Shown here in pieces: positions 13,555 through 38,996 of a stretch of 64,000 bases of DNA. How positions within the stretch are numbered: the first letter of the stretch is position 1; every line of letters begins with the position of its first letter. The stretch is from positions 1 through 64,000 of the IMG/VR virus record IMGVR_UViG_3300042868_009074. One strand, written 5' to 3'. The notes under the pieces are model-generated. The model worked only from the letters and a program-made list of their open reading frames with translations, was not told the origin of the DNA and did not search any database. A program made the position numbers and the translations under genes.

Positions 13555-13842
13555 ATGATCGACATAGATCAACTCTATCAAAATGAAATTGATTTATTAA
13601 ATGATAGAATTTCTACTTTTACAGAATTCTCATTTAATATAAACAATCTATTTAAACAAACTCAAGGCGTTCGAAATTCTTTAGACCTAGCTCAAGAATA
13701 TGTTAATAGCAAAGATTATATAAACGGTTATAAGTCTCTTCTTCATTCTATTTCTTTATTAGTAAATATTAATGAAGATATACTATCTCAATATTCTCAA
13801 ATGTCTATAATCCTAAAGGATTCTAATGGCTCGCAAATTTAA
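13555..13842 (+). CDS. Hypothetical coiled-coil protein
   Basis: 95-aa ORF, SD AGGAG. Confidence 0.7.
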   Translation: MIDIDQLYQNEIDLLNDRISTFTEFSFNINNLFKQTQGVRNSLDLAQEYVNSKDYINGYKSLLHSISLLVNINEDILSQYSQMSIILKDSNGSQI

Positions 13843-14236
13843 AGTTAAAGGTCTCAAAAACCTCTCCGATGTTGTTCTTTCTCAAGTATCTTGGAAAGAC
13901 AAAGCACATTGTAAGACCAAAGAAGTTTCTATATTCTTTGGCAACCCTAAATCTAATGAAACTAATCTAGCTGTTTCTATTTGCAAGTCTTGTTCTGTTA
14001 GACAGGACTGTTTCTATGAGGCTATCCAGTATGGATATGACGGTGTTTGGGGCGGTTCTACTGCTGAACAACGACAGTCTATTATAGATGTAGTTATGGA
14101 ATCTAACATAACTAATCTAACAAAAGAAACATCTAATACTCTACTTTCCTATGTAGACATGATAGGTAAAACCAAAAATTCAGCAACAGCTGATCTTATA
14201 AACATCAAATTATCTGAATTGGATCCAAATGTCTAA
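13826..14236 (+). CDS. whiB: WhiB-family transcription regulator
   Basis: WKDKAHC...CKSCSVRQDC...GVWGG...R. Confidence 0.9.
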   Translation: MARKFKVKGLKNLSDVVLSQVSWKDKAHCKTKEVSIFFGNPKSNETNLAVSICKSCSVRQDCFYEAIQYGYDGVWGGSTAEQRQSIIDVVMESNITNLTKETSNTLLSYVDMIGKTKNSATADLINIKLSELDPNV

Positions 14237-14939
14237 TAATATTTACAACACTAATGACGATGATATCTTCGATGATTACCAAGAACCTTCTACTTCAACT
14301 GATCCACTCCTTGAAGCTCCTCTTGTTAATGAAGATAAATCATTTGAAAAAGTTTTCTCAGATTTAAATTCTCCATTTGAATCACTCATCCAAAATTCTT
14401 CACTCAAAGTAAACTTTGGGGAAGCTTTCTACAACGCTGCTCATGAGTGGATTATGCAAGGCTATCGTGAAGCTGGCGATATATCTATTATAGATTCACT
14501 TGTTAAAATGAGCGATGGTAAATATCTTTATGAACACCGTCTCAATTGCTCCCGGCAAACTCTAGCTCGTAAAAAAACTGTACTTAAATTTTTGTCTATT
14601 CTCCTAGACAACACAGATGAATCTAACACTATTGTTTCTAATAATACGCATCATGATTTTAATTTCTCTGAAGCTTACTTTAGTATGTTCTTTCGTAGCT
14701 TTTACAATATACAGCTACATACTTTTCATCATGAAACCGCTTTGTATAAAGCTTTGTGTGAAATACTAGAAGTAGAACCAGATCACGATCTTTGTGATCC
14801 AAATGTAGAAACTGTTGCTATTACTAGCACTACAGACTACATTAATACTTTGTATATGCAATACTTCGACAGAGATTCCCTACAGCAGAAAATTGATAAG
14901 TATCTTGAAGAAATTTCCTTTAATAAAAATCAAGCCTAA
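14229..14939 (+). CDS. Hypothetical acidic protein
   Basis: 236-aa ORF overlapping whiB end. Confidence 0.75.
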   Translation: MSNNIYNTNDDDIFDDYQEPSTSTDPLLEAPLVNEDKSFEKVFSDLNSPFESLIQNSSLKVNFGEAFYNAAHEWIMQGYREAGDISIIDSLVKMSDGKYLYEHRLNCSRQTLARKKTVLKFLSILLDNTDESNTIVSNNTHHDFNFSEAYFSMFFRSFYNIQLHTFHHETALYKALCEILEVEPDHDLCDPNVETVAITSTTDYINTLYMQYFDRDSLQQKIDKYLEEISFNKNQA

Positions 14940-15360
14940 AACAGCTCAACTACTCTTGACTATAGGTAGTGCAGCTGGCTTAGCAGCTATCAATTACACG
15001 ATTATACATAATCCTATTGTATTCGTATTTGTTATGTCTTTATTCTTACATGAATTTGGACATTACTTTATTGCCAGGAAGTATGGCGCTAACGCCGACC
15101 TTCCTTATTTTATCCCTTTATTCCCATTGAATATTGGAATAACAAGAATTAGAAATTTAAAACCCAAACATATTCCAGCTGTTTCTATAGCTGGTCCAAT
15201 GTTTGCTTCTATGTTTTTAATATTCTTTATAATGTTTAATTCTATTTATAGATTATTTGCATTCATGCCATTATTTTTAATTTTAGCTTTTGAAATTATA
15301 TTGAACTATTTTGGTTCTGATGGAAAAAAATATCGTAAATATAATTTACAAACAGTCTAG
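14905..15360 (+). CDS. M50 (site-2 protease-like) membrane metallopeptidase; start uncertain (TTG 14905)
   Basis: LHEFGH zinc motif, VSIAGP, TM segments, SDG equivalent of the D ligand. Confidence 0.78.
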   Translation: MKKFPLIKIKPKTAQLLLTIGSAAGLAAINYTIIHNPIVFVFVMSLFLHEFGHYFIARKYGANADLPYFIPLFPLNIGITRIRNLKPKHIPAVSIAGPMFASMFLIFFIMFNSIYRLFAFMPLFLILAFEIILNYFGSDGKKYRKYNLQTV

Positions 15361-16069: not shown

Positions 16070-17884
16070 ATGACTGTCAATTATTCAATTATTCAATCAG
16101 ACGAAGGTGCTATAGCAGTACAATCTACTGTTCAGTCCTTTAATCTAGACCACATTACTAACAAAGATATTGTTTCTTTTTATACCCGGTTCTCTCAATT
16201 CAGTGCTTGGGATACAGGCATTCTTCCAGTAGACGGAAGTGGTGTTCTATCCATACGTACTGCTGGCGAATACACTCAGTTTGCCTATCAGCATAAACCT
16301 GGTCTTTACCATGTTAACTGGGGTGAATCAGAAGGTGCAGCAGCTGCAGCATACTATCTTGCTCAACCATATCGAATCATTATTTGTGACATGAAAGATG
16401 GCAATCTTCTTGGAGCTAGAATGTTCTACTCCCCATATCCCATAACCAACCCATCTCAGCCACTGTACCATGTTAATCTTCCTAATATTAACTGCAATGG
16501 CTACCGTGGCAATGGTGTTGGCTGGATCTGCCTATACCAAAATGAAGATTGGTCTACTCTTCCACTTAATGAACGGATTGTTCGATTCATTGAACGCTGT
16601 TCAGGTGTAGAAACTTACAACGATGCCAATATGTCAGAGACTGATGGTACTCGTTTTTACAAGAAAAATGATAAACCATCTTATTTCTGGGACCCAGTAG
16701 AATGGGAAACCAAATCCGCCGAAGAAGGATATCAATGGACTCTAGATGAAGATCTTTTGATTCCTGTCCTAGTTAAGTCCATGGACAGTCAGTCTGAGCA
16801 TTGCTCTAACGGTGTTCCCCTAACATTTGCTGATGCTCTTGTAGGAGACTACCAGGCTTACTACTATGACAAAAAGCACACTAAGACCATCAATGCTGTC
16901 ATACGTCCTGATAAAGAATTGGATCCTAAAGAAATCCTTTCTTTCTTTGTAGCTTCTTACAACGGAGCTAATTCCCAAAGTAATCCTTTATTAAATAATA
17001 CTTTTGAATCTTCTGAATTAGTTAAACAAAACGTTGGCTCTGCCACTTTTACTGGTTCAGTATTAACTAACGCTCCTGCAGCTCATGCTTCTCATGAAGA
17101 TTCCCCAGATGTTTATTGTGAGACTTGTGAAAATTACTTTACTCAAGATGATATATCTGGAGACTACTATGGCAATAATGTTTGCACTGGTTGCTTAGAA
17201 GACAGTTTTACCTATATTGAATCTGCTGATGCTTATTTTAATCATGAAGATGAAAATATTATATATATAGAACTTCAGGCTACTTCCTTCCATACTGAAT
17301 TTGACTCAGTTGAGATATGTGAAAACTGCAATCAAGCATACGGTAAAGAAGGAAAGAATAACCCTCCTGACAAAGTCATTTGTTTAGATAACAATGACAA
17401 CGTTTGCCCTAAGTGCATTGAGAACTATGCTTACGATAAAGGTATTTCTACTGGGACTTGTGTTTCTTGTGCTAAGTTTGTTGTTACTGAACCAGATTTT
17501 TCTCATCATTACCTCAGCACTCACATTAGTCTTCCATATTATGACTATGAGACTAACGAATCATCGTCAGACGTTAAAGTAGTAACATTCTGTTCTTCTT
17601 GTCAAGACAAACTGCTGATATGTCCATGTGGATTGGTTAAATCTAAATCTTTAGAAGATTTCAATCCTTGTACCCCAATACAATCTGGCACAGGTGAAGA
17701 TGCTATTTCTATAGATAAAGCTTGTGTCTCCTGTGTCAACTTTACCTTTCATGACTCAGAAGAGTTAGAAGCAAATTTTGTTCCTGTATCAATCAGTAAT
17801 TTTACAAATTATCAGAATCAACTTACTTCTATTACTTCAATCCATCAAGGTTTTCAGAAAACTGTAGATGAAGAACCATTTTAA
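16070..17884 (+). CDS. Prokaryotic E2-like (family D-like) protein with C-terminal multi-CxxC region
   Basis: YYLAQPY..I...RMFYSPYPITNPSQPLYHVNLPNIN...GWICL; seven CxxC pairs downstream; lies next to JAB/E1/Ubl. Confidence 0.6.
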   Translation: MTVNYSIIQSDEGAIAVQSTVQSFNLDHITNKDIVSFYTRFSQFSAWDTGILPVDGSGVLSIRTAGEYTQFAYQHKPGLYHVNWGESEGAAAAAYYLAQPYRIIICDMKDGNLLGARMFYSPYPITNPSQPLYHVNLPNINCNGYRGNGVGWICLYQNEDWSTLPLNERIVRFIERCSGVETYNDANMSETDGTRFYKKNDKPSYFWDPVEWETKSAEEGYQWTLDEDLLIPVLVKSMDSQSEHCSNGVPLTFADALVGDYQAYYYDKKHTKTINAVIRPDKELDPKEILSFFVASYNGANSQSNPLLNNTFESSELVKQNVGSATFTGSVLTNAPAAHASHEDSPDVYCETCENYFTQDDISGDYYGNNVCTGCLEDSFTYIESADAYFNHEDENIIYIELQATSFHTEFDSVEICENCNQAYGKEGKNNPPDKVICLDNNDNVCPKCIENYAYDKGISTGTCVSCAKFVVTEPDFSHHYLSTHISLPYYDYETNESSSDVKVVTFCSSCQDKLLICPCGLVKSKSLEDFNPCTPIQSGTGEDAISIDKACVSCVNFTFHDSEELEANFVPVSISNFTNYQNQLTSITSIHQGFQKTVDEEPF

Positions 17885-17916: not shown

Positions 17917-19572
17917 ATGTCTAACGATACTAAGGAAATAAAAACCATCACTTTAGATGATTTAAATTACTTTTGGATGCCTAACGGTGCTCCATGCTTT
18001 ATCGCCAATAACTATGATGTTGTTGATGATTACTGCGATACTGTTGAAAGTTTTGGCTTTCAAATTTATTATATCATAACCGATAAAGAAACAAGTAAAA
18101 CTGTTCAAGTCAAAAACGACAAAGGAGTTATGATTCCAACTGAAGTATATGATTATACTCCAGCTGTATTTAAAGTTGTTAATAACTTTACAGGTCGTGC
18201 CGTCATGGAATCCAAAGAACCTTTCGGTACTTCATTCTGCCCAGTAAAAGAAGTAGCAGAGTATACTATGCCTTCAATTCCTCGGATTATTATCGATAAA
18301 CTTGATGAGTTCTTTAGATTAGTTCATGCTCAGCATGGCACTGAGTCTATTGTTATCTTGACTTATGATACCACTAAAGAAGGTTCTGAAGGTTGGGGCG
18401 TCTTAGTCCCCGAGCAAGAGAACAACTCTGTTCACTGCAAGTATGACAATGATTCTATTGCTGCTATTAAACCAGATCATGTCATGATTGTTGGCTCTGT
18501 CCACAGTCATCCTGAGATGTCGGCATATGCTTCTGGTACAGACCATGAAGACCAAGCTGACTTTGATGGCATCCATATTACTTATGGCTGGCAAAAATCA
18601 GTTAATGCTGGAGCTACCCAGTATCACTTGGAGCTTCAGATTGGTGGTTCTAACTATGTACTCAAACCTGAAGATGTATTTGAATACAACCCTCCTCCCA
18701 CTAAGGACCCTGACCCAGAGGTTCTAGAGTGGAGCTCTAAAGTAAAAAAAGTATCCCCCCCGCTTATGGGGGTTTCGGGTACTCAGGTGGCGCATACACC
18801 AAGCCAGTCGTACCAGGCAAGTTGGGCTCTTCAAGCGACCAACTCTCGACCTATTCAAGCTGGTATGGATACGATTAGTTCTTTCGATAGAACTAAATTC
18901 ATATCTGACCTAGGTACAGTTGAAGCAGATGCTGTAGTTGCTATAGAAATAGATGATTCAACTAATCCAGATCGCAACTGCTTGATCTGTTATTTTCCTC
19001 TAACTTTAGCTGATCTCAACACTGGCTTCTGCATGACTTGTGATACTCCTATAATCACTCCAGAAATGGGTCATAGAGATATTCTAGCATTCCTAGACTA
19101 TTACTGTGACCAACGTGCTTTGGATCCTACAGTTCCTTATTATGTTTACTGCATGGATGAAAATAATAATTCAAATAACTTTTTGATTAATATTAAATCT
19201 GCTGGTCAAATTTCTAATCTAGAAGATCCTGAAGTAGAATTATATTCTGGTGCTGACTTTCTAGAGTATACAGTTTGCTGCAGTACGCCATTAACTATGG
19301 TGGAACTGTGCAAGTGCACTGTTACTGTCTTAGAGGAACACGTTGCTGACTTTGACAAAGCACACAAGGAAGTAGACATCTATGATTCTACTGACGACTG
19401 CTTGTCATGTGATAGTTATTATCAAACTTCATGTCCTCAATTTAAAAATGCTTTAGTTAATTATGTAACTTATAATTCTATTGTAAATGTTCAAATAAAA
19501 AAATGCGACAACTATGTCTATTATAAAGACTTAACTGCCGTCAATAATTTCGAAAGTACTTATTATGACTGA
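17917..19572 (+). CDS. JAB/MPN+ metallo-isopeptidase with C-terminal Cys-rich domain (possible -1 frameshift isoform ending at 18878)
   Basis: HGTES (Glu) and GSVHSHPEMSAYASGTD JAMM motif; CLIC, CMTC, CLSC in the C-terminal part. Confidence 0.85.
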   Translation: MSNDTKEIKTITLDDLNYFWMPNGAPCFIANNYDVVDDYCDTVESFGFQIYYIITDKETSKTVQVKNDKGVMIPTEVYDYTPAVFKVVNNFTGRAVMESKEPFGTSFCPVKEVAEYTMPSIPRIIIDKLDEFFRLVHAQHGTESIVILTYDTTKEGSEGWGVLVPEQENNSVHCKYDNDSIAAIKPDHVMIVGSVHSHPEMSAYASGTDHEDQADFDGIHITYGWQKSVNAGATQYHLELQIGGSNYVLKPEDVFEYNPPPTKDPDPEVLEWSSKVKKVSPPLMGVSGTQVAHTPSQSYQASWALQATNSRPIQAGMDTISSFDRTKFISDLGTVEADAVVAIEIDDSTNPDRNCLICYFPLTLADLNTGFCMTCDTPIITPEMGHRDILAFLDYYCDQRALDPTVPYYVYCMDENNNSNNFLINIKSAGQISNLEDPEVELYSGADFLEYTVCCSTPLTMVELCKCTVTVLEEHVADFDKAHKEVDIYDSTDDCLSCDSYYQTSCPQFKNALVNYVTYNSIVNVQIKKCDNYVYYKDLTAVNNFESTYYD

Positions 19573-20320
19573 TCAAAAACGTTTTGTTCTTGTTGGAGCT
19601 GGTGGCATTGGCACTTGGCTTGCAGCTGGACTTGCTCGCATGTTAGAGTTTAAATATCCTGGCTCTGCTCTTATTATCGTCGATGGTGATACATATGAAG
19701 AACGGAACAAAGAGCGTCAATCATTTTCTCAGATGGGAAACAAAGCAGTTGCTACTGCCCATGACTTGACCCAACAGTTTCCTAACACTATGTTTATCCC
19801 AGTCCCTAAATGGGTTGTTGACGACAACTTTGGTGGAGTCACAGATGATCAAGATTCTCCTAAAATTAAAGCTTCTGCTTTGATTACCGAAAACGATGTA
19901 GTCTTTGCTGTTGTTGACAACTTTGCTGCTCGTAAGATTATCTTTGATGCTGCTCAAAACTTAGACAACGTTGACATCTTTACTGGTGGCAACGATGACG
20001 CTTTATTTGGTAGTGTTTATCATTACCAACGCCGTGATGGTCACGATGTAACTGACCATCCAGTGCATACTCATTCTGAATATGAAAATCCTCCAGACAA
20101 AAATCCTGGTGAATTATCATGTCAAGATCGTGCCAAAATCGAAGGTGGTACTCAGCTATTGGCTACCAATATGGCTGTAGCTGCCTTCCTTCTTGGTCGC
20201 GTACAAAAGACAATTGTGTCTAATCAAAATCCCGACGAAGCAGAAATTTATTTTGACCTTGGTATCGGCAAGTCCGAACCATATGATCGTCGACCAACCC
20301 TACAACCTGTAGTACAATAA
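19565..20320 (+). CDS. ThiF/E1-like ubiquitin-like protein activating enzyme
   Basis: GAGGIG, VDGDTYEERNKERQ, DNFAAR, candidate catalytic Cys in LSCQD. Confidence 0.9.
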   Translation: MTDQKRFVLVGAGGIGTWLAAGLARMLEFKYPGSALIIVDGDTYEERNKERQSFSQMGNKAVATAHDLTQQFPNTMFIPVPKWVVDDNFGGVTDDQDSPKIKASALITENDVVFAVVDNFAARKIIFDAAQNLDNVDIFTGGNDDALFGSVYHYQRRDGHDVTDHPVHTHSEYENPPDKNPGELSCQDRAKIEGGTQLLATNMAVAAFLLGRVQKTIVSNQNPDEAEIYFDLGIGKSEPYDRRPTLQPVVQ

Positions 20321-20334: not shown

Positions 20335-20592
20335 ATGACTGCTATGAATAATACCGGAGGAGCAGCACAGTCTGCTTCTGGCCAAATGGCAAATGTCCGT
20401 TTTGGCGTTTACACTCAACCAGCACCAGTTGCTGGAAAGACTGTTCGCGAAGTTCGCGAGCAGTTCTCAAAGCTTTGGGGAATACCTTCTGATGCAGTAG
20501 CATACAAGGGTAAAGACAAGCTCGATGAGGATACTGTTATCGGTGCATCTGATAACGTAGAGTTCCACCGCCGTGCTGGCGAAAAGGGTTAA
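20335..20592 (+). CDS. Ubiquitin-like (beta-grasp) protein ending in Gly
   Basis: VRFG...VAGKTVREVR..F...WGIP...LDEDTVIG.SDNVEF.RRAGEKG; SD AAGGAG; directly after E1. Confidence 0.78.
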   Translation: MTAMNNTGGAAQSASGQMANVRFGVYTQPAPVAGKTVREVREQFSKLWGIPSDAVAYKGKDKLDEDTVIGASDNVEFHRRAGEKG

Positions 20593-20695: not shown

Positions 20696-22312
20696 ATGCT
20701 TTTTTCTCAAATAAAATTAGGTCATCCAACTTTATGGATTAAATCTATAGATTCTTTTAAGACTATAGAATCTATTGTAAATTATCCATCTAGAATTTAT
20801 TTTACATTAGATCCAGTTAAAGGTTTTTGTGAATATAAAAACCAAACTTGGAAACCAGTATTGGTAGACATGCCAAACCCAGATGATCCTGGTACAACTA
20901 TTAAAAAAACTACTTTTGATTTTGTAGTTGCAAACGAATTCCTTTCTACTTACCTAGAAGATAAGCCAAAGACATTTATATTTAACATCTTTGCTCAAGC
21001 TCAAGAGTTTGTAGGAAGTTATGCTGGCTTATTTAACCACGCTATGATGCAGTATCGTGATGCCTTTTGGACTAATGATTTATCTGAAATGCCTCTTCAG
21101 TATATTGTTACATCCCCATTTGATTGCCCTGAAGAATTTGCACACTTGTTTAAATTCGTAGAAATGGGCTATCCTTCTTCTGAAGAACTAACATCAGTTC
21201 TTTCTCATATCTCTACCTCTTCTGACGGTCAGTTAGTTAAGCCAGAGACAGTAAAAGATATTGTCAATGCCGGACTTGGTTTATCTGAGTCTGAGTTTAT
21301 CAACTTATCTTTACAATCTGTTTTAGAATGTGGCGAAGTATCTTCTGAATATATTTATTCTCAGAAGATGAGCGACATGAAGAAGAACGGCATACTTGAA
21401 ATCATCAAGCCTAAAGTTCACTTTCAAAATATTGGTGGCCTTGATGCCATTAAAGATTTGATTATACGTAATGCTAATCTATGGCATAACCCAGAACAAG
21501 CTGCTAAGTTTGGTATTTCTCCAATCCGTCGCATGCTTATGGTTGGGGTTCCAGGTACTGGCAAGTCAGCTATCTGTGAAGCTACTGCTAATGCCCTGGG
21601 TTTGGACCTAGCTCGTACTGGCATTAGCCAGGTAATGAACTCTTACATTGGTCAATCAGAGCAGAATATGCGTACTGTATTTAAACAAATCAATGCAATG
21701 GCTCCACTTTGTGTTTGGATCGATGAGTTTGGTCGAGATCTATCCGGTGGCTCCAGCTCGTCTCATGTAGATGGTGGCACTACAGACCGTGTCCACGGAG
21801 AGTTCCTTACAGGCCTTCAGGAGCTTCCTGACAACGTATTCTTGATGTGTGCAGCTAATCAGCTAGAACACCTTAAACCAGAGATGCTTCGTGCAGATCG
21901 TTTCGATAAGATTATGTTTGTAGGCTTGCCTTCATTTAGTGAGCGTTCTGATATTATTAAAATATATCTTTCCGACATTGACACAGATCATGTGTATAAT
22001 TATGATGCGATTTCTCATGCTACTCAGTATTTTACTGGTGCTGAGATCAAGTCTCTTATTAAGGAAGTTAAATTTTACGTTAGTTCTTCAGAACTTCGTG
22101 CAATCAATACCAATGATGTAGTTTCTTATGCTCCTAAAATGAGAAACATTCTTTGGAATAAAAGTCGTCCAATGATTCAAGACCTCTACAAAACAGCTAT
22201 AGATCAATGGGATTGGGCATCGACGGATCAGTTCGAAGATGCTAAACTTATAATGAACCCCAATCGTTCTACAGCACCTGTTTCAGCCCCTAAAATACCA
22301 GTATTTAAATAG
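20696..22312 (+). CDS. AAA+ ATPase (Ycf46/SpoVK/CDC48-like)
   Basis: GVPGTGKS Walker A, VWIDE Walker B, AAN...PEMLRADRFD second region of homology. Confidence 0.92.
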   Translation: MLFSQIKLGHPTLWIKSIDSFKTIESIVNYPSRIYFTLDPVKGFCEYKNQTWKPVLVDMPNPDDPGTTIKKTTFDFVVANEFLSTYLEDKPKTFIFNIFAQAQEFVGSYAGLFNHAMMQYRDAFWTNDLSEMPLQYIVTSPFDCPEEFAHLFKFVEMGYPSSEELTSVLSHISTSSDGQLVKPETVKDIVNAGLGLSESEFINLSLQSVLECGEVSSEYIYSQKMSDMKKNGILEIIKPKVHFQNIGGLDAIKDLIIRNANLWHNPEQAAKFGISPIRRMLMVGVPGTGKSAICEATANALGLDLARTGISQVMNSYIGQSEQNMRTVFKQINAMAPLCVWIDEFGRDLSGGSSSSHVDGGTTDRVHGEFLTGLQELPDNVFLMCAANQLEHLKPEMLRADRFDKIMFVGLPSFSERSDIIKIYLSDIDTDHVYNYDAISHATQYFTGAEIKSLIKEVKFYVSSSELRAINTNDVVSYAPKMRNILWNKSRPMIQDLYKTAIDQWDWASTDQFEDAKLIMNPNRSTAPVSAPKIPVFK

Positions 22313-24981: not shown

Positions 24982-26337
24982 ATGTCACATAACTATTCTG
25001 TTTTAGATGAACTTTTCGTCAAAAATTTACAATTCAACATAGACCTTCAACCTTTAATTAGTAGCAACAGTAAAATGGACACTGTCCCCCCTGCTTTGGC
25101 TTCTTTGATTCTCTCTAAATCAATTGAGCAATCTTGGGCTCCTAGTAATTACTACAACTCTAATATTGTAGCTAACGAATTGCAAACTGTTTTTCCTTTT
25201 CTTTCTGAAATAACTTATAACGTTAGTCTTACTTCTCATTACTTAGATGATCTTAAGAGCAAGAATTCTATAAAGTATGACAAATCATTCTTTAACACTT
25301 TTGCTCCTATAGCTGTTAGGTATACTAATGGCAGCAATATGTGGTTGATTGAGCGTCCTCCTTTTCAAGCCAATATTACCTACAGGGCTGCTGGTTCTAA
25401 CAGAATAGGCAAAGAAGTTTCCTATTCTATCTGGATGCCGTGGACTGTTATGTTTTTAGATGTTCGTCCAGAGCAGTCTTTCTATGATGCCTACTTGTAT
25501 TTTAATGATGGTCCTATTAGTTCTTTAGACGATGTTGCAGTTCCTTGTTTCTTTCCAAATATGTATGGCGACGGCAGGATGTGTTTAAATCAATCTGGTG
25601 TTATGTTGCAACAGCATCTGTCTCAAACTAATTCCTTCGATATCGCTACTATATATAATTTTCTTATTAATGATTACATGTCTGGTGGATGGAACTTAGA
25701 TTTAGGTATTCAGAATTTTGATAGAATTAGAAATCTTACTCAATTAACTAAGCAGTCTTATAGTCAAATAGTTCATGGTATTCCTAATGACAAAAACTAC
25801 CCCTCTTCTGTTTCTCCTAAAACTGGAAGAATTATACTTAAAAAGTATGTAAGTAATTTCTTAAATTATTTTTCTTTGTCTCCTATGAATTTAGTTTTAG
25901 ATCTCGTAACTTCCGTTAAACAACAAAAAGTACGTGACTTTAAAACTTATGCTCAATTAATTGAATCTCATGAAGATACCGCTTCTCCTGTTAATTCTCT
26001 TCTTTCTAGCTATAACACTGGTTCTCCGAGCATACTTCAGTCTTACAGGCTTCTTGTTTCTCCCAAGTTCTGCACTAGAGAAGTACTACATGATGATCCT
26101 CTTACCGATTATGCCAAGGTAGCTAAATCTATTATAGCTGTATTGGATGATCACCTTAAAGATAGTCTTCAAGATATTCTTACAACTACAGATCAATATA
26201 AGGTTATACAATCTTTTCAGACTGAGAATCCAATTCTATACATTGAAAATGAAGATACTGTGTTTATAGTAGATGAGAACTCTTCTGAGGAATTTTTCAA
26301 GCAGCTTATTGGCATTAAAGAAACGGCATCGTTATGA
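24982..26337 (+). CDS. Prokaryotic E2-like protein (paralog 2)
   Basis: IERPP...YSIWMPWTVMF...LYFNDGPISSLDD...FFPNMYGDGRMCL. Confidence 0.6.
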   Translation: MSHNYSVLDELFVKNLQFNIDLQPLISSNSKMDTVPPALASLILSKSIEQSWAPSNYYNSNIVANELQTVFPFLSEITYNVSLTSHYLDDLKSKNSIKYDKSFFNTFAPIAVRYTNGSNMWLIERPPFQANITYRAAGSNRIGKEVSYSIWMPWTVMFLDVRPEQSFYDAYLYFNDGPISSLDDVAVPCFFPNMYGDGRMCLNQSGVMLQQHLSQTNSFDIATIYNFLINDYMSGGWNLDLGIQNFDRIRNLTQLTKQSYSQIVHGIPNDKNYPSSVSPKTGRIILKKYVSNFLNYFSLSPMNLVLDLVTSVKQQKVRDFKTYAQLIESHEDTASPVNSLLSSYNTGSPSILQSYRLLVSPKFCTREVLHDDPLTDYAKVAKSIIAVLDDHLKDSLQDILTTTDQYKVIQSFQTENPILYIENEDTVFIVDENSSEEFFKQLIGIKETASL

Positions 26338-27500
26338 TTCAAGCTTCACTATTATCTACTAAGTCTCGCCAGTATTGGAATGACAATAGCACTTTAAAGA
26401 ACCTTAGTGCTAACAACGAGTATTCCGATCCTTCCGACACTAATAACCCTAAGGCAGCACTTTCTTTTGTTAATAGCTTAAATGATAAGAACGTAGATTC
26501 TGGCTTACTTCCTCCCGGGGTAAGGGTTTTTCTTCCTGGTTTCGTGATTTTTGAGCGTCCTCCTTCTATGCAGATGGTTCAGTACATTGATGCTAATGTT
26601 GACTCCATAAGAGAATACGAGGACAGCGGTTCTTTCTATGAAGATGGTGATTCTGAATCTGGCGAGTATCACGAAGAATTGAATTCTTATTCACTTCGTA
26701 TACCCGTTCCTTGGCAGTTATACATGGCCACATACAGCACCAATCCTGCTTCTATGTATAGAGTTACCAGTATTCGTATGTATTTTATGAATACACCTTT
26801 AAATCATCCCGACGTTGAATTGTATGCTCCATATGTAAATAATTTCTTTACAGACGGATCCTTATGTACTCCTATGTTTGATACTATAGATGAGATAGAC
26901 AGATATCCTCAAAATCTTGCTGGAGTTATTGCTTCTGCTTATGATTGGATCTGGAACACTGGCTTCAATGCTGATCTCAAGGAATGCATAGACATTAATT
27001 TTAATCATAATATTGCTCGTAAGAATCCTGTCATTAAGGACTTTCTTACTAAGTATGGAATACGTGAATATAAACCAGAACTTAGCAGATACGCTGCTTT
27101 TTATGATTATATGTCTCAACTTTCTGTCACTGATATAATAAATTTAGAGTGGGCTAGTCCTTCATACGGTCATCATTTTGATATGGATAAAGAGTTTCTG
27201 TTTTTAAATGATGAGGCTTTATTGGCGGAATTTCATGATTCCGAGTATTATAATCCTGATTCCGATGATGAGTACTATGATTTTAAACGCTTTCTTCCTG
27301 ATGTTAGTCAGATTAGCAAAACATACTCTAACATAATAGACTCTATGTTCTTTTCTAGAAGGACTAGAAGTATGGTTCGTGGGATTTATTCTGACTTAAC
27401 TGCTAAAAACAATATAGTCCTCAGCAGTCCTTCTTATTTTTGTCAGTCTTTGGCAAATCATATTCAATCTAATCCTTCTATTCTAGTTGATTCACTCTAG
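26334..27500 (+). CDS. Prokaryotic E2-like protein (paralog 3)
   Basis: FERPP...RIPVPWQLY...MYFMNTPLNHPDVELYAPYVNNFFTDGSLC. Confidence 0.6.
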   Translation: MIQASLLSTKSRQYWNDNSTLKNLSANNEYSDPSDTNNPKAALSFVNSLNDKNVDSGLLPPGVRVFLPGFVIFERPPSMQMVQYIDANVDSIREYEDSGSFYEDGDSESGEYHEELNSYSLRIPVPWQLYMATYSTNPASMYRVTSIRMYFMNTPLNHPDVELYAPYVNNFFTDGSLCTPMFDTIDEIDRYPQNLAGVIASAYDWIWNTGFNADLKECIDINFNHNIARKNPVIKDFLTKYGIREYKPELSRYAAFYDYMSQLSVTDIINLEWASPSYGHHFDMDKEFLFLNDEALLAEFHDSEYYNPDSDDEYYDFKRFLPDVSQISKTYSNIIDSMFFSRRTRSMVRGIYSDLTAKNNIVLSSPSYFCQSLANHIQSNPSILVDSL

Positions 27501-32095: not shown

Positions 32096-32704
32096 ATGAC
32101 CACTATAATTGCAATTCAAGGGCCAGACTATGCCCTGGTGTGTAGCGATTCTAGAATATCTAGCATGGACGAAGGTGGCTTTACATCCCAGATCACAACA
32201 TTAGGTTCTAACTCAGCTAAAGTAGCAGAGAACAATAAGTATCTATTAGGTGCTGCCGGCGACATGAGAGCTATTAATATACTGCATCATGCTTTTACCC
32301 CACCTATTCCTCCTGTTGGGACTACTGGTAAGAAGTTAGATAACTTTATCACTACTAAGTTTGTTCCATCATTAAGAGAATGCTTTGAGAAACAAGGTTA
32401 TGCGTCTCCTGAGAATGAATCATCTACACATATAGCACAGCATGAATCTACTATTTTGACAGTAGTATCTGGTAACATCTATATTATTGATGGCGACTAT
32501 TCTTGGACTTCAGATGTTAATGGCATTTATGCTATTGGCACTGGCAGTTACTATGCACTGGGTGCTCTACAAGTTCTGTGTTCAACAAAAATAGCGACAC
32601 CAGCTCAAGCTAAAAAGAATGCTTTAAAAGCTATTGCCATATCGGCTAAATACGATCCATATACCGGTGGACCATTCCACTGTTATATTCAGGAAAAATC
32701 TTAA
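32096..32704 (+). CDS. Proteasome-beta/HslV-like Ntn threonine protease
   Basis: M-TTIIAI (N-terminal Thr), SDSRIS, Lys in SAKV, GAAGD, AIGTGS, DPYTGG. Confidence 0.85.
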   Translation: MTTIIAIQGPDYALVCSDSRISSMDEGGFTSQITTLGSNSAKVAENNKYLLGAAGDMRAINILHHAFTPPIPPVGTTGKKLDNFITTKFVPSLRECFEKQGYASPENESSTHIAQHESTILTVVSGNIYIIDGDYSWTSDVNGIYAIGTGSYYALGALQVLCSTKIATPAQAKKNALKAIAISAKYDPYTGGPFHCYIQEKS

Positions 32705-34532: not shown

Positions 34533-35277
34533 CCATCTTGAAATGAGAAAAGCTTTAAATCGAGCTCAACAGTCTTTACTAGCACCTGATTCAGGTGGCT
34601 GGTCTAGGATTGATAATATATGGACTGAAACTACTGACGATCTTTATGTGGACAATATAGATTTTCAAGTCAAAAAAGAAGGTTCTTTTAAAGTTACTGT
34701 TGATGGTTTTCCAAGACAAGGTAATAGATATCTTAGAAGAAAGATCCTTTTAGCCTTCCCTCAAGCAGCTATGCCATTTCCTTTGTGTCATAAGCAAGTG
34801 GCGTTAGAAGAAGCTATTAGCGATAGTCATTTTGTGTTATCTACTTTTAGAGATCCTTTGAAGAGTGTTAGTTCTTATATATCTGAATTCATTCATCACA
34901 ATAACGTAAACGGAATTTTAAATCCTTTAAAAGATTATATTTATACTGAAGATGATTATTTTTATATAGAAAAATGTTTTTTATTTTATATTAGAATGAC
35001 AGATTTTATATATAATAATATTGACGATATCTTTGTTGTTCCATTTGATTCTATTGCCGGCGATAAAGATAATTCTTTAACAGCATCTATCTCTAAATTA
35101 TTACCTACCACAGAATATATAGATCCTTACGAAGTAGAACCTCACTCTAGTCGCGATACTAAAATGCAAGATTACTTAATGACAGATAAGTTTCATCATA
35201 TACTAGAGTTAGCTAATCAATCCTATAATAGGGTTTTAGATTTATCTAGCATTAAAAGAGATAGGTTTGTATTATGA
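34525..35277 (+). CDS. PAPS-dependent sulfotransferase-like protein
   Basis: DGFPRQGNRYL (5'-PSB-like) and FRDPLKSVSSY (3'-PB-like). Confidence 0.65.
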   Translation: MVDHLEMRKALNRAQQSLLAPDSGGWSRIDNIWTETTDDLYVDNIDFQVKKEGSFKVTVDGFPRQGNRYLRRKILLAFPQAAMPFPLCHKQVALEEAISDSHFVLSTFRDPLKSVSSYISEFIHHNNVNGILNPLKDYIYTEDDYFYIEKCFLFYIRMTDFIYNNIDDIFVVPFDSIAGDKDNSLTASISKLLPTTEYIDPYEVEPHSSRDTKMQDYLMTDKFHHILELANQSYNRVLDLSSIKRDRFVL

Positions 35278-36017
35278 TAATATTAATTATAGGTTTACCG
35301 GGAGCTGGCAAAACAGCTTTAGCTACTCAGTTGGCAGCTAAGACCAATTCTATTCATATTAATGCTGATGTAGTAAGAGCTGATCTTAGCTCTGATCTTG
35401 GTTTTTCTATAGAAGATCGTATAGAACAGGCTCGTAGAGTTGGAGCTATAGCTAGACTTCTTTCTGACCAAGATAGAGATGTAGTAGTTGATTTTATTTG
35501 TCCCACTAAAGCTACAAGAGAATCTTTTGGTCGCGCCGATAAAATCATTTGGGTAGATAGAATAAATAAAAGTCACTACGAAGACACCAATGCTATATGG
35601 GAAGACCCATTAGAATATGACCTTAGAATTAAACCTCACCTTACTCTTGATCAAGAAGTGGATTTTGTTATTGATCGATTCCAGCTTGTAGACTGGACTA
35701 AGCCAACTACCTTACTGCTTGGTCGCTACCAGCCTTGGCATGATGGTCACTCAGCCCTTATGAGCGAGGGTTTAAAGAGAACCAATCAAGTTGTTATAGC
35801 TGTTAGGTCTAGCTATAAGACTTCTGAGAAAGACCCTTTTACTTATCCTGAAGTTAAGCAGTTCATTGAGTCTAAAGAAACTAATCCTTTTGTATTGCAA
35901 TTTCCTAATATTACTAATATAATTTACGGTAGAGACGTAGGATATGAAATAGAAAAAGTTGATCTTTCTTCTGACCTTCAAGCTATTTCTGCTACAGCTA
36001 TCAGATCTAAATTATAA
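35274..36017 (+). CDS. cysC: Adenylylsulfate kinase-like domain fused to HxGH nucleotidyltransferase domain
   Basis: GLPGAGKT, INADVVR...DLGFSIEDRIEQARR; GRYQPWHDGH. Confidence 0.85.
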   Translation: MIILIIGLPGAGKTALATQLAAKTNSIHINADVVRADLSSDLGFSIEDRIEQARRVGAIARLLSDQDRDVVVDFICPTKATRESFGRADKIIWVDRINKSHYEDTNAIWEDPLEYDLRIKPHLTLDQEVDFVIDRFQLVDWTKPTTLLLGRYQPWHDGHSALMSEGLKRTNQVVIAVRSSYKTSEKDPFTYPEVKQFIESKETNPFVLQFPNITNIIYGRDVGYEIEKVDLSSDLQAISATAIRSKL

Positions 36018-36042
36018 TTTAAAAAACCTATATGGGGTAAAA

Positions 36043-36267
36043 ATGAAAAAAAATTTTCGAGACCAAATTCGTTTTTACATAAATTCTAAATTTCCCAATA
36101 AAAAAATAAAGATTAAGTTCGTCACTCATTCTGGCAAAAAGATTTGCAACGTAAAGCTAACTAAGAAACAATTCAATGCTATTACATTGGCTGCTTCTTT
36201 AAGCAATGAAACCGTTCAAGACTTTTTCTTAAATTCTATTAAAATATATCTAAAGGATAAAAAATGA
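36043..36267 (+). CDS. Small basic hypothetical protein
   Basis: Start at internal ATG after GGGG SD-like sequence. Confidence 0.6.
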   Translation: MKKNFRDQIRFYINSKFPNKKIKIKFVTHSGKKICNVKLTKKQFNAITLAASLSNETVQDFFLNSIKIYLKDKK

Positions 36268-36503
36268 ACCATCATGTACACTTTAGTGACATTATAAAGA
36301 AGTTAAAAAGAGAACCTTTAAATAGTGACCAACCAGACTTGACTACTAATGAGCAAATACTAAACCAAAGATCTTTGATAAAATTTTGGATAGATCATGC
36401 TACCAGATTAGAAGAACAAAATAACCAACTAAAGATTGAATTAGAACAAGCTTCTCAATCAGCCATTATGCTAAGAGAGTTAATGAATGAATCACGACCC
36501 TAG
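36264..36503 (+). CDS. Small coiled-coil protein
   Basis: 79-aa ORF, ATGA-coupled. Confidence 0.6.
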   Translation: MNHHVHFSDIIKKLKREPLNSDQPDLTTNEQILNQRSLIKFWIDHATRLEEQNNQLKIELEQASQSAIMLRELMNESRP

Positions 36504-37098
36504 CAGAAAACCTCCTCTCTATAAGGGCAACAGTGTTCAAGAAGCTTTTGTTCTAAATCTATTAGATGAGAAAAGAAGTGGTCATTACGTTGAGTTAGGT
36601 GCTTTTGATTCTAACTTAGGAAGTAATACATATCATCTCGAGAATGATTATGGATGGAATGGCGTTTCATTTGAAATATTAGATGACAGACGCAATCAAT
36701 TTATATCTAATAGAAAAAATCCTTGTTACGGTGATGCTCTAGACTTTAACTATATTAATTACTTTGAAGAGAATAACTTTCCTAAGCAAATAGATTATCT
36801 TCAAGTAGATATAGACGCCGGCTATCAACAAGATGGTAGACCCTTTGGCAATCATTATCTTACTCTATTGGGCCTTATATCTTTGCCATTGACCCAGTAT
36901 AGATTCTCTGTTATAACTTTTGAGCATGATTCTAATATGTATTTTAGAAATACTGGAATGCGTGACGCACAGAGAGAAATTCTAGATTCTTTAGGGTATA
37001 CTCTTGTGGTTAGGGAAATCCACGAAGATTGGTGGGTTGACCCGAATGTATTACCGATTGATAAATATAGGAAATACCTAAGATGGGAGACACTGTAA
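36487..37098 (+). CDS. FkbM-like SAM-dependent methyltransferase
   Basis: YVELGAFD...SNTYHLE...GWNGVSFE; IDYLQVDID; ITFEHD. Confidence 0.8.
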   Translation: MNHDPSRKPPLYKGNSVQEAFVLNLLDEKRSGHYVELGAFDSNLGSNTYHLENDYGWNGVSFEILDDRRNQFISNRKNPCYGDALDFNYINYFEENNFPKQIDYLQVDIDAGYQQDGRPFGNHYLTLLGLISLPLTQYRFSVITFEHDSNMYFRNTGMRDAQREILDSLGYTLVVREIHEDWWVDPNVLPIDKYRKYLRWETL

Positions 37099-37643
37099 TG
37101 ACTTACTCTACTTTAATAATAGAAGACTTTATTGATGATAAAGATCTAGATCTACTAATAGAATCTTTTGCTAAAGCACCTTTTGATTCCGCGCCAAATA
37201 ATCCAAATCTATTCAGCTATCAAATACCTAGAGACTATATTCATGCAGCAATAACTGACATGATTAATGATAAGCTCACTAGCACTCTAGAAGAGCATTA
37301 TAAGGTAAAGATATCTCAATACACAAGTGGATCAGTCACTCGCTACACAGAAGGACAATATATAGGGTTACATGCAGACTGGGCCCCGGAAGATGTGTAC
37401 GTTCAAACTCTTGATAAAAAGAGAGTAGACATTAGTTCTGTTACGTATCTTAATCAGGATTTTACTGGTGGAGAATTAGTATTCTGTGAAATTAGTAAAG
37501 ATTTATTAATGACTAAATTGATGACTTTAGTTCCAAGAAGCGGAATGGTCATATTCTTTGATGCCCTTAAATCACACTACACCAAGCCAATAATTAAAGG
37601 TGCTAAGTATTCTTATACTAACTTTTATTCTTTAGAGGATTAA
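37098..37643 (+). CDS. 2OG-Fe(II) oxygenase (prolyl-4-hydroxylase-like)
   Basis: LHAD...SVTYLNQDFTGGEL...HYTKP..KGAKYS. Confidence 0.85.
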   Translation: MTYSTLIIEDFIDDKDLDLLIESFAKAPFDSAPNNPNLFSYQIPRDYIHAAITDMINDKLTSTLEEHYKVKISQYTSGSVTRYTEGQYIGLHADWAPEDVYVQTLDKKRVDISSVTYLNQDFTGGELVFCEISKDLLMTKLMTLVPRSGMVIFFDALKSHYTKPIIKGAKYSYTNFYSLED

Positions 37644-37681
37644 AAAAAATTCAAAAGGCTAAGGTTAATAACTATAGGACA

Positions 37682-37996
37682 CTAAAGCCTAAATCTCATT
37701 ACTTGAGCTGCTACTTCTCCAGCTTCTAATACTCCACTAAGAGTTCTCCTGGCCATTCCTCCAGCTTGTGTGACTGCTTCTGCTACCATAGCTTCTGGCT
37801 CAGCAACTTCTGAGGCAACTTGGGCTATAGCTCCTGGTCTTACTTGGCTAATGCCTGTAGAGATTCTTTCTGAATATTTAACTAAATTTTGATAATTGGC
37901 GAATGTCTTATTATTTAGTTCTCCAAAATTTCTAATCATATAATCGTCAGCAGTGCTTTGTAGTTGCCTCATTACCGGGTTGAGTACCTGGCCCAT
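37682..37996 (-). CDS. Hypothetical Ala-rich protein (putative virion/injected)
   Basis: 104-aa ORF downstream of and co-directional with 38001..38921. Confidence 0.65.
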   Translation of the reverse strand: MGQVLNPVMRQLQSTADDYMIRNFGELNNKTFANYQNLVKYSERISTGISQVRPGAIAQVASEVAEPEAMVAEAVTQAGGMARRTLSGVLEAGEVAAQVMRFRL

Positions 37997-38000
37997 TTCA

Positions 38001-38921
38001 TCACCGATAGTTTACAGTACCCATAAAAGTTCCATGAGCCTCTATTGATCCCAATTTTTCTAAATTATCAAAATCTAAATGAGCAGCCAATGCATTATAT
38101 GCTGGGGATTTACGCGCATCATCTAAATAACGTTTTGTATAATTTCCAAACGGCAGAAATTCATCATTTAACTGATGATAACCTGATAGAAAAGTTCTTT
38201 GAATATCATCGGAAGAGGCACCTCCATTTAATATCAAATCTATGGAACTTTGTCCAATTTTGGTTTTTGATATTAATCCAGAAAAAGACTCCGCTTTAGC
38301 CTCCGATAAACCATGTTCACCCATTGCTTTTAGAAATTTATTTTGAAATTCATCAGCTACGTCTTTTGTTATACCAAATGGTGTTTCTGCTCCCTGAGAC
38401 TCGTCTGCAAATTGAGTTAATGTATCTAATACTTGATAAAACTCAATAAAACCTTTTGATTTAGCTAAATTAGTTAAATTATCTACACTATGACCAATTT
38501 CATGTAACCCAGTTTTTAACATTCTTGTTTGGGATTCTGTTGCAACATCGTTTGGATTAAATACTAGTAAGTTACTAATCGTGTTGCTGTCTTTAATTTT
38601 AATACCTTCATGTTTTAACATATCAGCTAAAGCAGTTCTTTGATATGGTTGTACGGTTGCAGCATGTGCCCTAGCTGTTGGGCCCAGAGGGTTAAAGCCA
38701 AATTTTGCCAATACATCATTATTTACGGAAATGCCTAAGGTTCTTCTGGTCATAGTTGAAGCGGGGACGAAATTTTCTTCCATATGAATATAAGATCTAT
38801 CTAACCCTATATCTTTCATGTTTGTTTCTAATGCTCGCATGCCCTTCTTAGCTTCTGGGGCAGATTTTCCAGCAGCAAACATAAAATGGTCAATGGGCAT
38901 TGAGACTGGGAATAAATCCAT
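38001..38921 (-). CDS. Zincin-like (HExxH) protein
   Basis: GLHEIGHSV and downstream EAKAE; preceded by TTACTAT. Confidence 0.6.
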   Translation of the reverse strand: MDLFPVSMPIDHFMFAAGKSAPEAKKGMRALETNMKDIGLDRSYIHMEENFVPASTMTRRTLGISVNNDVLAKFGFNPLGPTARAHAATVQPYQRTALADMLKHEGIKIKDSNTISNLLVFNPNDVATESQTRMLKTGLHEIGHSVDNLTNLAKSKGFIEFYQVLDTLTQFADESQGAETPFGITKDVADEFQNKFLKAMGEHGLSEAKAESFSGLISKTKIGQSSIDLILNGGASSDDIQRTFLSGYHQLNDEFLPFGNYTKRYLDDARKSPAYNALAAHLDFDNLEKLGSIEAHGTFMGTVNYR

Positions 38922-38951
38922 GTTATAACCTTAAAATTAAAAACTAATTAT

Positions 38952-38958: not shown

Positions 38959-38996
38959 CCCTTTAAAGTGATAGGACCTCAAAACGCCAAAAATGT

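What the first reader, a model, noticed from the sequence alone, without database searches (positions are those of the whole stretch)
24982..27500. Two additional E2-like paralogs downstream: an expanded viral E2 repertoire
Both proteins share (I/F)ERPP...PW...YF...P...N.(Y/F).DG..C with the E2-like gene at 16070 (N....GWIC), each keeping a putative catalytic Cys, but with unrelated flanking domains. Three E2s per E1/Ubl would suggest substrate selection at the E2 level in the absence of a clear E3.
Basis: partly seen in the sequence, partly recalled or inferred. Interest (0 to 1): 0.7.

Follow-up and report, generated by a model that had tools for sequence, protein, structure and literature searches.

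The report
Paired E2-like enzymes in a phage
Two adjacent genes of a large uncultured phage encode diverged ubiquitin-conjugating (E2) fold proteins that each keep the active-site Asn and Cys, are predicted to pair as a heterodimer, and sit in a conserved phage module that also carries a third E2-like protein, an E1, a deubiquitinase-type peptidase, a small ubiquitin-like protein and a Cdc48-like ATPase.

Summary
ORF A (24982-26337, 451 aa) and ORF B (26334-27500, 388 aa) have no Pfam or PHROG match and only marginal BLASTP similarity. Their family profiles, however, align at 96% probability (E 1.3e-9), so they are true paralogs. A wider B profile also aligns with the N-terminus of the 604-aa E2-like protein at 16070 (85%, E 6e-6).

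AlphaFold models (pLDDT about 84) place the UBC/E2 fold in both cores. An all-against-all structure search returns almost only E2 enzymes at the top (Z up to 5.8). AlphaFold DB hits include PRTRC protein B and UBC-core proteins.

Each family keeps an invariant Asn followed 8 residues later by an invariant Cys, which is the canonical E2 spacing. The Cys is present in all 202 B-family sequences that cover the site.

The gene pair is always adjacent and overlaps by ATGA. It is predicted to form a pseudo-symmetric heterodimer (score 0.73, best control 0.00), and the "unrelated flanks" form the interface.

The whole E2–JAB–E1–Ubl–AAA…A–B module is syntenic in relatives with only 27-34% identity. 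Catalysis and charging by the phage E1 are inferred, not shown. I rate it a new variant of a known kind, of moderately high interest.

The parts
24982..26337 (+). ORF A, 451 aa: E2-like paralog. Core E2 fold lies at about residues 100-310; the N-terminal strands and C-terminal helices form the predicted dimer interface.
   Evidence: ORF. Family of 59 homologues. AlphaFold model pLDDT 84.7. In the all-against-all structure search, 37 of the top 37 hits are E2/UEV folds, with Z up to 5.8. AFDB hits to PRTRC protein B and UBC-core proteins.
25558..25584 (+). Active-site loop of A: N193 M Y G D G R M C201 (Asn, then Cys 8 residues on).
   Evidence: N193 and C201 are 100% conserved in 52 sequences. 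An ungapped but weak match (E=1) to Arabidopsis UBC1 residues 77-90 puts N193 on N80 and C201 on C88.
26334..27500 (+). ORF B, 388 aa: E2-like paralog. Core E2 fold lies at about residues 54-273.
   Evidence: ORF. Family of 68 homologues; 493 representative clusters in the exhaustive search. AlphaFold model pLDDT 84.1, pTM 0.75. Top 27 structure-search hits are all E2 enzymes. AFDB hits at 3e-10 to 2e-4 include PRTRC protein B and a UBC-core protein.
26841..26867 (+). Active-site loop of B: N170 F F T D G S L C178.
   Evidence: N170 and C178 are invariant in 62 sequences and in 202 of 202 covering sequences of the wider set.
26334..26337 (+). ATGA overlap of the A stop codon and the B start codon (translational coupling).
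   Evidence: Sequence. The same 4-base overlap occurs in relatives L005 and L006.
16070..17884 (+). 604-aa protein: N-terminal E2-like domain (P138-N139 ... C154, also C142) plus a Cys-rich C-terminal half.
   Evidence: 428 homologues. hhalign to the wide B family 85%, E 6e-6. ESM Atlas neighbours are viral clusters with partial Prok-E2_D hits, structural TM 0.77. IBR_1 hit only sub-threshold.
17917..19572 (+). JAB/JAMM-type peptidase (551 aa) with a Cys-rich C-terminal region.
   Evidence: Pfam Prok-JAB 2.1e-5, 24.8 bits, just under the 25-bit cut-off. An HxH...S..D motif is visible in the translation.
19565..20320 (+). Minimal E1-like adenylating enzyme (251 aa) with invariant Cys186.
   Evidence: Pfam ThiF 7.3e-14. 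Invariant NPPDKNPGELSC loop in five phages.
20335..20592 (+). 85-aa candidate ubiquitin-like modifier ending in Gly directly before the stop codon.
   Evidence: The C-terminal sequence NVEFHRRAGEKG-stop is invariant in four phages at 65-84% overall identity. The fold was not tested.
20696..22312 (+). Cdc48/VCP/VAT-like AAA+ ATPase (538 aa).
   Evidence: Pfam AAA 4e-24. Best solved relatives are Cdc48 and VAT D2 domains, 1.5e-53.

Best explanation
ORFs A and B are two diverged paralogs of the E2 (UBC) superfamily. They are closest to the poorly annotated viral relatives of Pfam Prok-E2_D and share ancestry with the N-terminal domain of the 604-aa protein at 16070.

Shown or strongly supported:
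- Each keeps the E2 core: a beta-meander, an active-site loop and the following helices.
- Each keeps an invariant Asn and an invariant Cys 8 residues later.
- They are co-translated (ATGA overlap).

Predicted: they form a pseudo-symmetric heterodimer through their N-terminal strands, homologous core segments and C-terminal helical extensions.

Inferred mechanism:
- The 251-aa E1 adenylates the C-terminal Gly of the 85-aa Ubl and takes it onto Cys186.
- The Ubl is then passed by transthioesterification to the E2 cysteines (C154 of the 604-aa protein; C201 of A and/or C178 of B).
- The A/B pair acts as a second, distinct conjugating unit that delivers Ubl to other targets or builds another linkage.
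- The JAB peptidase reverses conjugation, and the Cdc48-like ATPase acts on the products.
For: Homology:
- A-B hhalign 96.4%, E 1.3e-9.
- Wide B HMM reaches A family members at 6e-12.
- Wide B against the 604-aa family: 85%, E 6e-6.

Fold:
- Models have pLDDT about 84.
- The all-against-all structure search gives only E2 enzymes in the top 27 (B, Z to 4.5) and only E2/UEV folds in the top 37 (A, Z to 5.8, 132 residues at 3.5 A), spanning nearly whole E2 chains. Bacterial BubB, Cap2 and the CdnG-E2 also appear.
- AFDB Foldseek hits PRTRC system protein B and UBC-core proteins at 1e-5 to 3e-3.
- The ESM Atlas puts all three proteins next to viral clusters with partial Prok-E2_D hits.
- 6 of 62 B homologues touch Prok-E2_D. 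A short relative at 1e-37 (P0368) passes its cut-off with 26.4 bits against 25.

Active site:
- Asn and Cys are invariant at 8-residue spacing, or 8-9 in distant A-likes.
- This equals UBE2D2 N77/C85. Cys85 is confirmed in 10.1101/2023.09.26.559546; N77 is from my own knowledge.
- An ungapped match to UBC1 residues 77-90 supports the register.

Pairing: ipSAE 0.73 against a best control of 0.00. That mark was reached by 58 of 80 solved complexes and 2 of 110 mismatched pairs. The runs share at least 95% of contacts and the partner pLDDT is 80-81.

Context: the module order is conserved at 27-34% identity. The E1 Cys is invariant and the Ubl ends in an invariant Gly.
Against: - Neither window protein matches any Pfam E2 family, even at E<=1. 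The PF14460 model run on the whole record gives only a sub-threshold hit, to the second-copy A-like gene.
- Foldseek against the PDB gave nothing significant (best E 0.26).
- Structure-search Z scores of 4.5-5.8 are in a range the tool itself calls common. The argument rests on the uniformity of the hit list, not on the scores.
- The His of the classical HPN motif is absent. The His after the Cys that marks Bil/6d E2s is not conserved either.
- A and B lie about 4.7 kb and five genes downstream of the E1.
- No test of E1-E2 contact was run.
- The complex score used my own alignments, so its calibration holds only roughly.
- The residue-level placement of the Cys rests on sequence register and secondary structure, not on a superposition.
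Confidence: 0.6

Rival explanations
1. A and B have the E2 fold but are not Ubl-charged enzymes. They would act as non-catalytic adaptors, like UEV/RWD proteins. Possible roles are a regulatory or substrate-receptor pair for the 604-aa E2, or decoys that bind host E1/E2-type defence proteins (CBASS Cap2, Bil). The conserved Cys would then be structural.
For: - No Pfam E2 hit.
- They are separated from the E1 by five genes.
- The large predicted heterodimer interface suggests a scaffold.
- In a distant phage group, the gene upstream of the single clear E2-like gene keeps the QRRP/PIPW/FFND strands but has no Cys in the loop. This hints that one partner can lose catalysis.
Against: - Asn and Cys are invariant at the canonical spacing in both families, and in 202 of 202 covering sequences of the wider B set.
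- UEV-type proteins are defined by loss of that Cys.
- The Cys-less protein in L007 is linked only by weak single-sequence hhalign matches (33-44%).
Confidence: 0.25
2. The E2-like fold is used for chemistry unrelated to the neighbouring Ubl cascade, and co-location merely reflects conserved early-gene order in this phage lineage.
For: - The whole 30-kb region is syntenic, including unrelated genes such as SSB, UDG and HNH. Linkage alone is therefore weak evidence of shared function.
Against: - Three homologous E2-like proteins sit with exactly one E1, one JAB and one Ubl in every relative inspected.
- No other known role exists for a Cys-bearing E2 fold (established knowledge of the superfamily).
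Confidence: 0.1
3. The shared motifs are chance resemblance between unrelated proteins.
For: Pairwise BLASTP E-values of 0.07 to 2.
Against: - Profile comparisons at E 1.3e-9 and 6.2e-6.
- Cross-family HMM hits at 6e-12.
- The same top AFDB hit for both models.
- The same fold class in both structure searches.
Confidence: 0.02

Closest known systems
Pfam Prok-E2_D (PF14460): the E2-like proteins of bacterial Ubl/JAB/E1/E2 operons (type 6d of Iyer et al. 2006, PMC1779556), now studied as Type I Bil defence systems
   Same: - E2 fold with a conserved Cys.
- Lacks the His of the classical HPN motif.
- Associated with a ThiF-type E1, a JAB peptidase and a Gly-terminated Ubl.
- It is the only Pfam family that members of the B family touch, and a relative at 1e-37 passes its cut-off.
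- ESM Atlas neighbours of all three proteins carry it.
   Different: - The window proteins do not match the model.
- There is no conserved His after the Cys.
- The proteins are 2-3 times longer, with N- and C-terminal extensions.
- They are encoded by a phage rather than a bacterial defence island.
- There are three E2-like genes per module instead of one.
- The E1 is a 251-aa single domain rather than a multidomain BilD-type E1.
- The gene order differs.
Type II BilABCD (E. aridi E1:E2:Ubl structures; 10.1101/2023.09.26.559546) and Bub systems (BubB, PDB 9eav)
   Same: - A complete prokaryote-type Ubl cascade with a minimal E2 fold.
- An E2 dimer was seen in the BilB crystals.
- BubB appears among the structural matches of both models.
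   Different: - BilB has the CEHH signature (C138, H151), which is not found here.
- These systems are anti-phage defences of bacteria.
- They have no paired paralogous E2s.
Eukaryotic UBC E2s, and the Ubc13-Mms2 (E2-UEV) heterodimer
   Same: - Best solved structural matches (UBE2S, Ubc8, UbcH5, UbcH7, UbcH10).
- Identical Asn-to-Cys spacing of 8.
- The idea of two E2-fold paralogs working as one unit.
   Different: - 6-14% identity.
- No HPN His.
- Here both partners keep the Cys, whereas Mms2 lacks it.
- The predicted interface uses lineage-specific N-terminal strands and C-terminal helices rather than the Ubc13-Mms2 surface.
PRTRC system protein B (Prok-E2_B)
   Same: AFDB Foldseek hits at 1e-5 to 4e-3 for both models. 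It is a bacterial mobile-element E2-like protein that works with an E1-like protein and a JAB.
   Different: No sequence-level match, and the gene neighbourhood differs (PRTRC sits on integrative elements and plasmids).

Membership tests
E2/UBC superfamily (fold level) | Core of an N-terminal helix, a four-stranded antiparallel meander, an active-site loop and following helices | tested here: met
   Models have pLDDT about 84. Secondary-structure order in A is strands 120-125, 128-135, 145-162, 167-175, then a loop, then helices 203-216 and 221-234. In the all-against-all search the top 27 (B) and top 37 (A) hits are E2/UEV chains aligned over about 115-145 residues. The Z scores (4.5 and 5.8) are modest.
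E2/UBC superfamily (fold level) | Catalytic Cys in the loop after strand 4, with the HPN-motif Asn about 8 residues upstream | tested here: met
   A has N193/C201 and B has N170/C178, invariant at spacing 8. The ungapped register with UBC1 residues 77-90 puts the Cys on C88 (E=1, weak). The His of HPN is replaced by F/Y/V. No 3-D superposition was available.
E2/UBC superfamily (fold level) | Forms a thioester with a Ubl handed over by an E1 | not testable with these tools
   Needs biochemistry.
Pfam Prok-E2_D (PF14460) | Score above the curated gathering cut-off (25 bits) | tested here: not met
   There is no hit for A, B or the 604-aa protein at E<=1. The model run on the record gives 11.6 bits, and only on the second-copy A-like gene. 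6 of 62 B homologues hit below the cut-off. The relative P0368 scores 26.4 bits, so the link is transitive only.
Pfam Prok-E2_D / Bil-type E2 (operon 6d, BilB) | Absolutely conserved His C-terminal to the catalytic Cys (PMC1779556; BilB H151 in 10.1101/2023.09.26.559546) | tested here: not met
   In the 22 residues after the Cys, A has H212 in 79% of sequences, B has no His column, and the 604-aa family has H157 in 52%.
Bil-type Ubl conjugation system | Co-encoded Ubl with C-terminal Gly, E1, E2 and JAB peptidase | tested here: met
   ThiF 7e-14 and Prok-JAB 2e-5. The 85-aa protein ends in an invariant Gly. E2-like proteins as above. The order E2-JAB-E1-Ubl is conserved. It differs from Bil in gene order, E1 size and phage origin.
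UEV / inactive E2 variants | E2 fold lacking the catalytic Cys | tested here: not met
   The Cys is invariant in both families, so A and B are not UEV-type.

The most novel reading that the evidence does not exclude
This lineage of ~215-kb phages may carry its own self-contained ubiquitin-like protein-fate pathway. It would comprise one E1, one Gly-terminated Ubl, a Zn-ribbon-fused E2, a heterodimeric double-Cys E2 pair (A/B), a JAB isopeptidase, a Cdc48-like unfoldase and a proteasome-beta-like peptidase. The phage would use it during infection to tag and remove or remodel host proteins (for example defence proteins) or its own. It would be a viral mirror image of the bacterial Bil defence.
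Probability: 0.25. Interest if true: 0.85.

Novelty: new variant of a known kind. Interest (0 to 1): 0.66.

Why it matters
Prokaryotic ubiquitin-like conjugation has so far been characterised as a bacterial weapon against phages (Bil, CBASS Cap2/Cap3, Bub). Here the complete enzyme set is on the phage side and is conserved across hundreds of metagenomic relatives. It has an expanded E2 complement in which two paralogs, both keeping the active-site Cys, appear to have become an obligate pair.

If they are active, this gives a simple experimental system: small E1, 85-aa Ubl, no processing needed. It could show how E2 duplication creates specificity without E3s, and what a virus of bacteria gains from tagging proteins. 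It also gives a fold assignment to several large, entirely unannotated viral protein clusters.

Tried and rejected
- Direct Pfam and PHROG scans of A and B gave nothing useful. The one PHROG hit, to an NTP pyrophosphohydrolase at E 0.0065, looks spurious.
- Pairwise BLASTP was not significant.
- tblastn against 50,697 deposited phage genomes found no match for A, B or the 604-aa N-terminus. The E1 matched only a Bacillus phage ThiF at 27% identity.
- Foldseek against the PDB with the B model had a best E of 0.26. E2s were among the top rows but were not significant.
- Profile searches of PDB sequences gave only a spurious Mis12 hit for B and an E=1 UBC1 hit for A.
- The PF14460 model on the whole record was sub-threshold only.
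- The A-family and 604-aa-family members gave no consistent Pfam family.
- The Cys-rich C-terminal halves of the 604-aa and JAB proteins, as possible RING/IBR E3 domains, gave only IBR_1 at E 0.018-0.043, far under the cut-off. This is unresolved.
- I considered and rejected chance motif similarity, and UEV-type inactive variants (the Cys is invariant).
- The 257-aa gene upstream of the short E2-like gene in L007, as a Cys-less A homologue, gave only weak hhalign matches (33-44%). I keep it as a hint.
- Six literature searches found no description of a phage-encoded E1/E2/JAB/Ubl module with extra E2 paralogs. The held library lacks most subscription papers, so absence is not proof.
Full report
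**What is there.** The finding covers two same-strand ORFs. A is 24982-26337 (451 aa) and B is 26334-27500 (388 aa). The stop codon of A and the start codon of B share the four bases ATGA.

Upstream on the same strand lie five related genes:
- a 604-aa protein (16070-17884);
- a 551-aa protein with a Prok-JAB match (2.1e-5);
- a 251-aa ThiF-type E1 (7.3e-14);
- an 85-aa ORF;
- a 538-aa AAA ATPase (4e-24).

Neither A, B nor the 604-aa protein matches any Pfam or PHROG family directly.

**Is the resemblance more than chance?** Pairwise BLASTP is marginal (A-B E 0.07; A or B against the 604-aa protein E 0.66-2). Each protein, however, heads a sizeable metagenomic family: 59 homologues for A, 68 for B, and 428 for the N-terminus of the 604-aa protein.

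- A: E124 R125 P126 P127, P153 W154, N193, C201, N238-x-D240 L241.
- B: E74 P76 P77, P126 W127, N170, C178, N212-x-D214 L215.

Profile evidence for homology:
- Profile-profile comparison of A and B gives 96.4% probability, E 1.3e-9 over 185 columns.
- A B profile widened with hits from the exhaustive search reaches A-family proteins at E down to 6.4e-12.
- That wide profile aligns with the 604-aa N-terminal family at 85%, E 6.2e-6 over 96 collinear columns. The alignment pairs DSGLLP with DTGLLP, FERPP with QHKPG, PIPWQ with AQPYR, and P-N170 with P138-N139.

So all three are homologous, with A and B closer to each other.

**Fold.**
- AlphaFold2 models built on the family alignments are confident. 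B has pLDDT 84.1 and pTM 0.75; A has pLDDT 84.7.
- Foldseek against the PDB found nothing significant for B.
- An all-against-all structural search of 48,161 PDB representatives returned only ubiquitin-conjugating enzymes in the first 27 rows for B. Z was 3.4-4.5 over model residues about 54-273.
- The same search returned only E2 or UEV folds in the first 37 rows for A. Z reached 5.8, with 132 residues at 3.5 A over residues about 100-310.
- Bacterial BubB, Cap2 and a CdnG-associated E2 appear further down both lists.
- These Z values are individually modest. The uniformity of the lists and the near-complete coverage of the E2 chains carry the argument.
- Foldseek against AlphaFold DB clusters gives the same top hit for both models (3.3e-10 and 1.1e-8). 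It also gives named hits to PRTRC system protein B and UBC-core proteins.
- The ESM Atlas places A, B and the 604-aa N-terminus beside the same viral clusters. Between 11 and 20% of those cluster members touch Pfam Prok-E2_D. They also sit beside a bacterial alpha-hel2 + Prok-E2_D cluster.
- Six of 62 B homologues touch Prok-E2_D below its cut-off. A short (284 aa) relative found at about 1e-37 passes it, with 26.4 bits against 25.

**Active site.**
- In both families an invariant Asn is followed 8 residues later by an invariant Cys that directly precedes a helix (A N193/C201; B N170/C178).
- This equals the spacing in canonical E2s. UBE2D2 has C85 according to 10.1101/2023.09.26.559546, and N77 from my own knowledge.
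- The only E2 the A profile touches in PDB sequences is Arabidopsis UBC1. The match is an ungapped 14-residue stretch that puts N193 on N80 and C201 on C88 (E=1, so only a register check).
- Cys and Asn are present in 202 of 202 covering sequences of the wider B set. They are also kept, at spacing 8-9, in distant A-likes and in the record's second copies.
- The HPN His is absent. The His downstream of the Cys that marks Bil/6d E2s is not conserved.

**The pair.**
- A and B homologues share contigs throughout the hit lists.
- In three relatives at 27-34% identity, an A-family gene sits immediately upstream of the B-family gene, twice with the same 4-base overlap.
- A complex prediction with controls supports binding: score 0.73 (runs 0.69, 0.73, 0.73) against a best control of 0.00.
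- That mark was reached by 58 of 80 solved complexes and 2 of 110 mismatched pairs. The runs share at least 95% of contacts and the partner pLDDT is 80-81. The calibration holds only roughly because my own alignments were used.
- The interface joins the N-terminal strands of both proteins (A 1-10 with B 1-12), the homologous segments A 110-118 / B 57-67 and A 178-182 / B 155-159, and the C-terminal helices.
- It is therefore pseudo-symmetric, and the 'unrelated flanks' are what hold the pair together. The active-site loops are not among the listed contacts.

**The module.**
- The order E2(604)-JAB-E1-Ubl-AAA, then four or five small genes, then A-B-…-SSB-UDG is conserved in all relatives inspected.
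- The E1 has an invariant Cys186 in an NPPDKNPGELSC loop.
- The 85-aa protein ends in an invariant …NVEFHRRAGEKG followed by the stop codon. A free C-terminal Gly would therefore be available without processing.
- The ATPase is most similar to Cdc48/VCP/VAT D2 domains (1.5e-53).
- A more distant phage group has a single clear 269-aa E2-like gene at the B position. It matches both the A and B profiles. The gene before it keeps the strand motifs but has no loop Cys; the link is weak.

**Interpretation.**
- Shown or well supported: A and B are paralogous E2-fold proteins related to the 604-aa protein. Each has an invariant Asn/Cys pair in the canonical register. They are genetically coupled and embedded in a conserved Ubl-cascade module.
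- Predicted: they form a heterodimer.
- Inferred: they are charged with the 85-aa Ubl by the 251-aa E1 and act as a second conjugating unit.
- The main rival is a non-catalytic adaptor or decoy role, which the invariant Cys argues against.
Whether the Cys-rich regions supply E3-like function is open.

**Novelty.**
- The E2 superfamily and prokaryotic E2-E1-JAB-Ubl operons are known (PMC1779556; 10.1101/2023.09.26.559546; 10.1101/2023.09.04.556158).
- I found no paper describing a phage-encoded version with paired extra E2 paralogs.
- No deposited phage genome carries these genes.
- The relatives in BFVD are all 'uncharacterized protein' of uncultured phages.
- I therefore file it as a new variant of a known kind.

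Noticed in passing
whole record (G000, 267,766 bp); window 1-50,663 against record 208,025-267,766: The last ~60 kb of the virus record is collinear with the first ~50 kb at only 65-91% nucleotide identity, with an offset of about 215 kb. It carries a second, diverged copy of the 604-aa E2-like gene (231464-233407), an A-like gene (240641-241807) and a B-like gene (241803-242870). The record is probably a wrap-around or chimeric assembly of two related ~215-kb phages rather than one genome, so the six E2-like genes count as three per genome.
   Followed up: partly
window 32096-32704 (+): A 202-aa protein matches Pfam Proteasome subunit above its cut-off (6.1e-7, 29.7 bits against 22.4). Its matches to solved beta subunits and HslV are weak. 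It is conserved at the same place in relatives. Together with the Ubl cascade and the Cdc48-like ATPase, this suggests a phage-borne degradation pathway.
   Followed up: partly
window 20696-22312 (+): The AAA ATPase beside the Ubl gene is closest to Cdc48/VCP/VAT D2 domains (1.5e-53). These are unfoldases that in eukaryotes and archaea act on ubiquitin- or SAMP-tagged proteins.
   Followed up: partly
window 13826-14236 (+) and 9080-9547 (+): There is a WhiB-family regulator (7e-14) and a DUF732 protein (7.7e-5). Both are typical of Actinobacteria and their phages. With about 35% GC, this points to a low-GC planktonic actinobacterial host. The host was not tested.
   Followed up: no
window 16970-17884 (+) and 18907-19572 (+): The C-terminal halves of the 604-aa E2-like protein and of the JAB protein are rich in CxxC pairs and are probably multiple zinc ribbons. 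Only a sub-threshold IBR_1 hit was found (E 0.018-0.043). They could be E3-like or substrate-binding modules.
   Followed up: partly
window 14815-15360 (+), overlapping 14229-14939: A 181-aa ORF with an HEFGH motif gives sub-threshold Peptidase_M50 hits (1.2e-5, 25.2 bits against 27.2). It overlaps the end of the preceding ORF by about 125 bases, so its true start is probably further downstream.
   Followed up: no
window 7013-8530 (+): A phage-encoded subtilase (Peptidase_S8, 3.9e-33) sits next to a ResIII/DEAD helicase.
   Followed up: no
window 35274-44387, and GC profile 42001-52000: There is a cluster of sugar and nucleotide-modifying genes: APS-kinase-like/cytidylyltransferase, 2OG-Fe(II) oxygenases, a GlcNAc-type glycosyltransferase and a GDP-mannose-dehydratase-type epimerase. 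It is followed by a block of higher GC (0.41-0.44 against about 0.35).
   Followed up: no
loci L007 and L008 (contigs of 88 kb and 186 kb): A more distant phage group keeps the E1-Ubl-AAA…E2-like-SSB-UDG order but has a shorter (269 aa) core-only E2-like gene. The gene preceding it appears to have lost the loop Cys. This may be an ancestral or reduced state of the A/B pair.
   Followed up: partly
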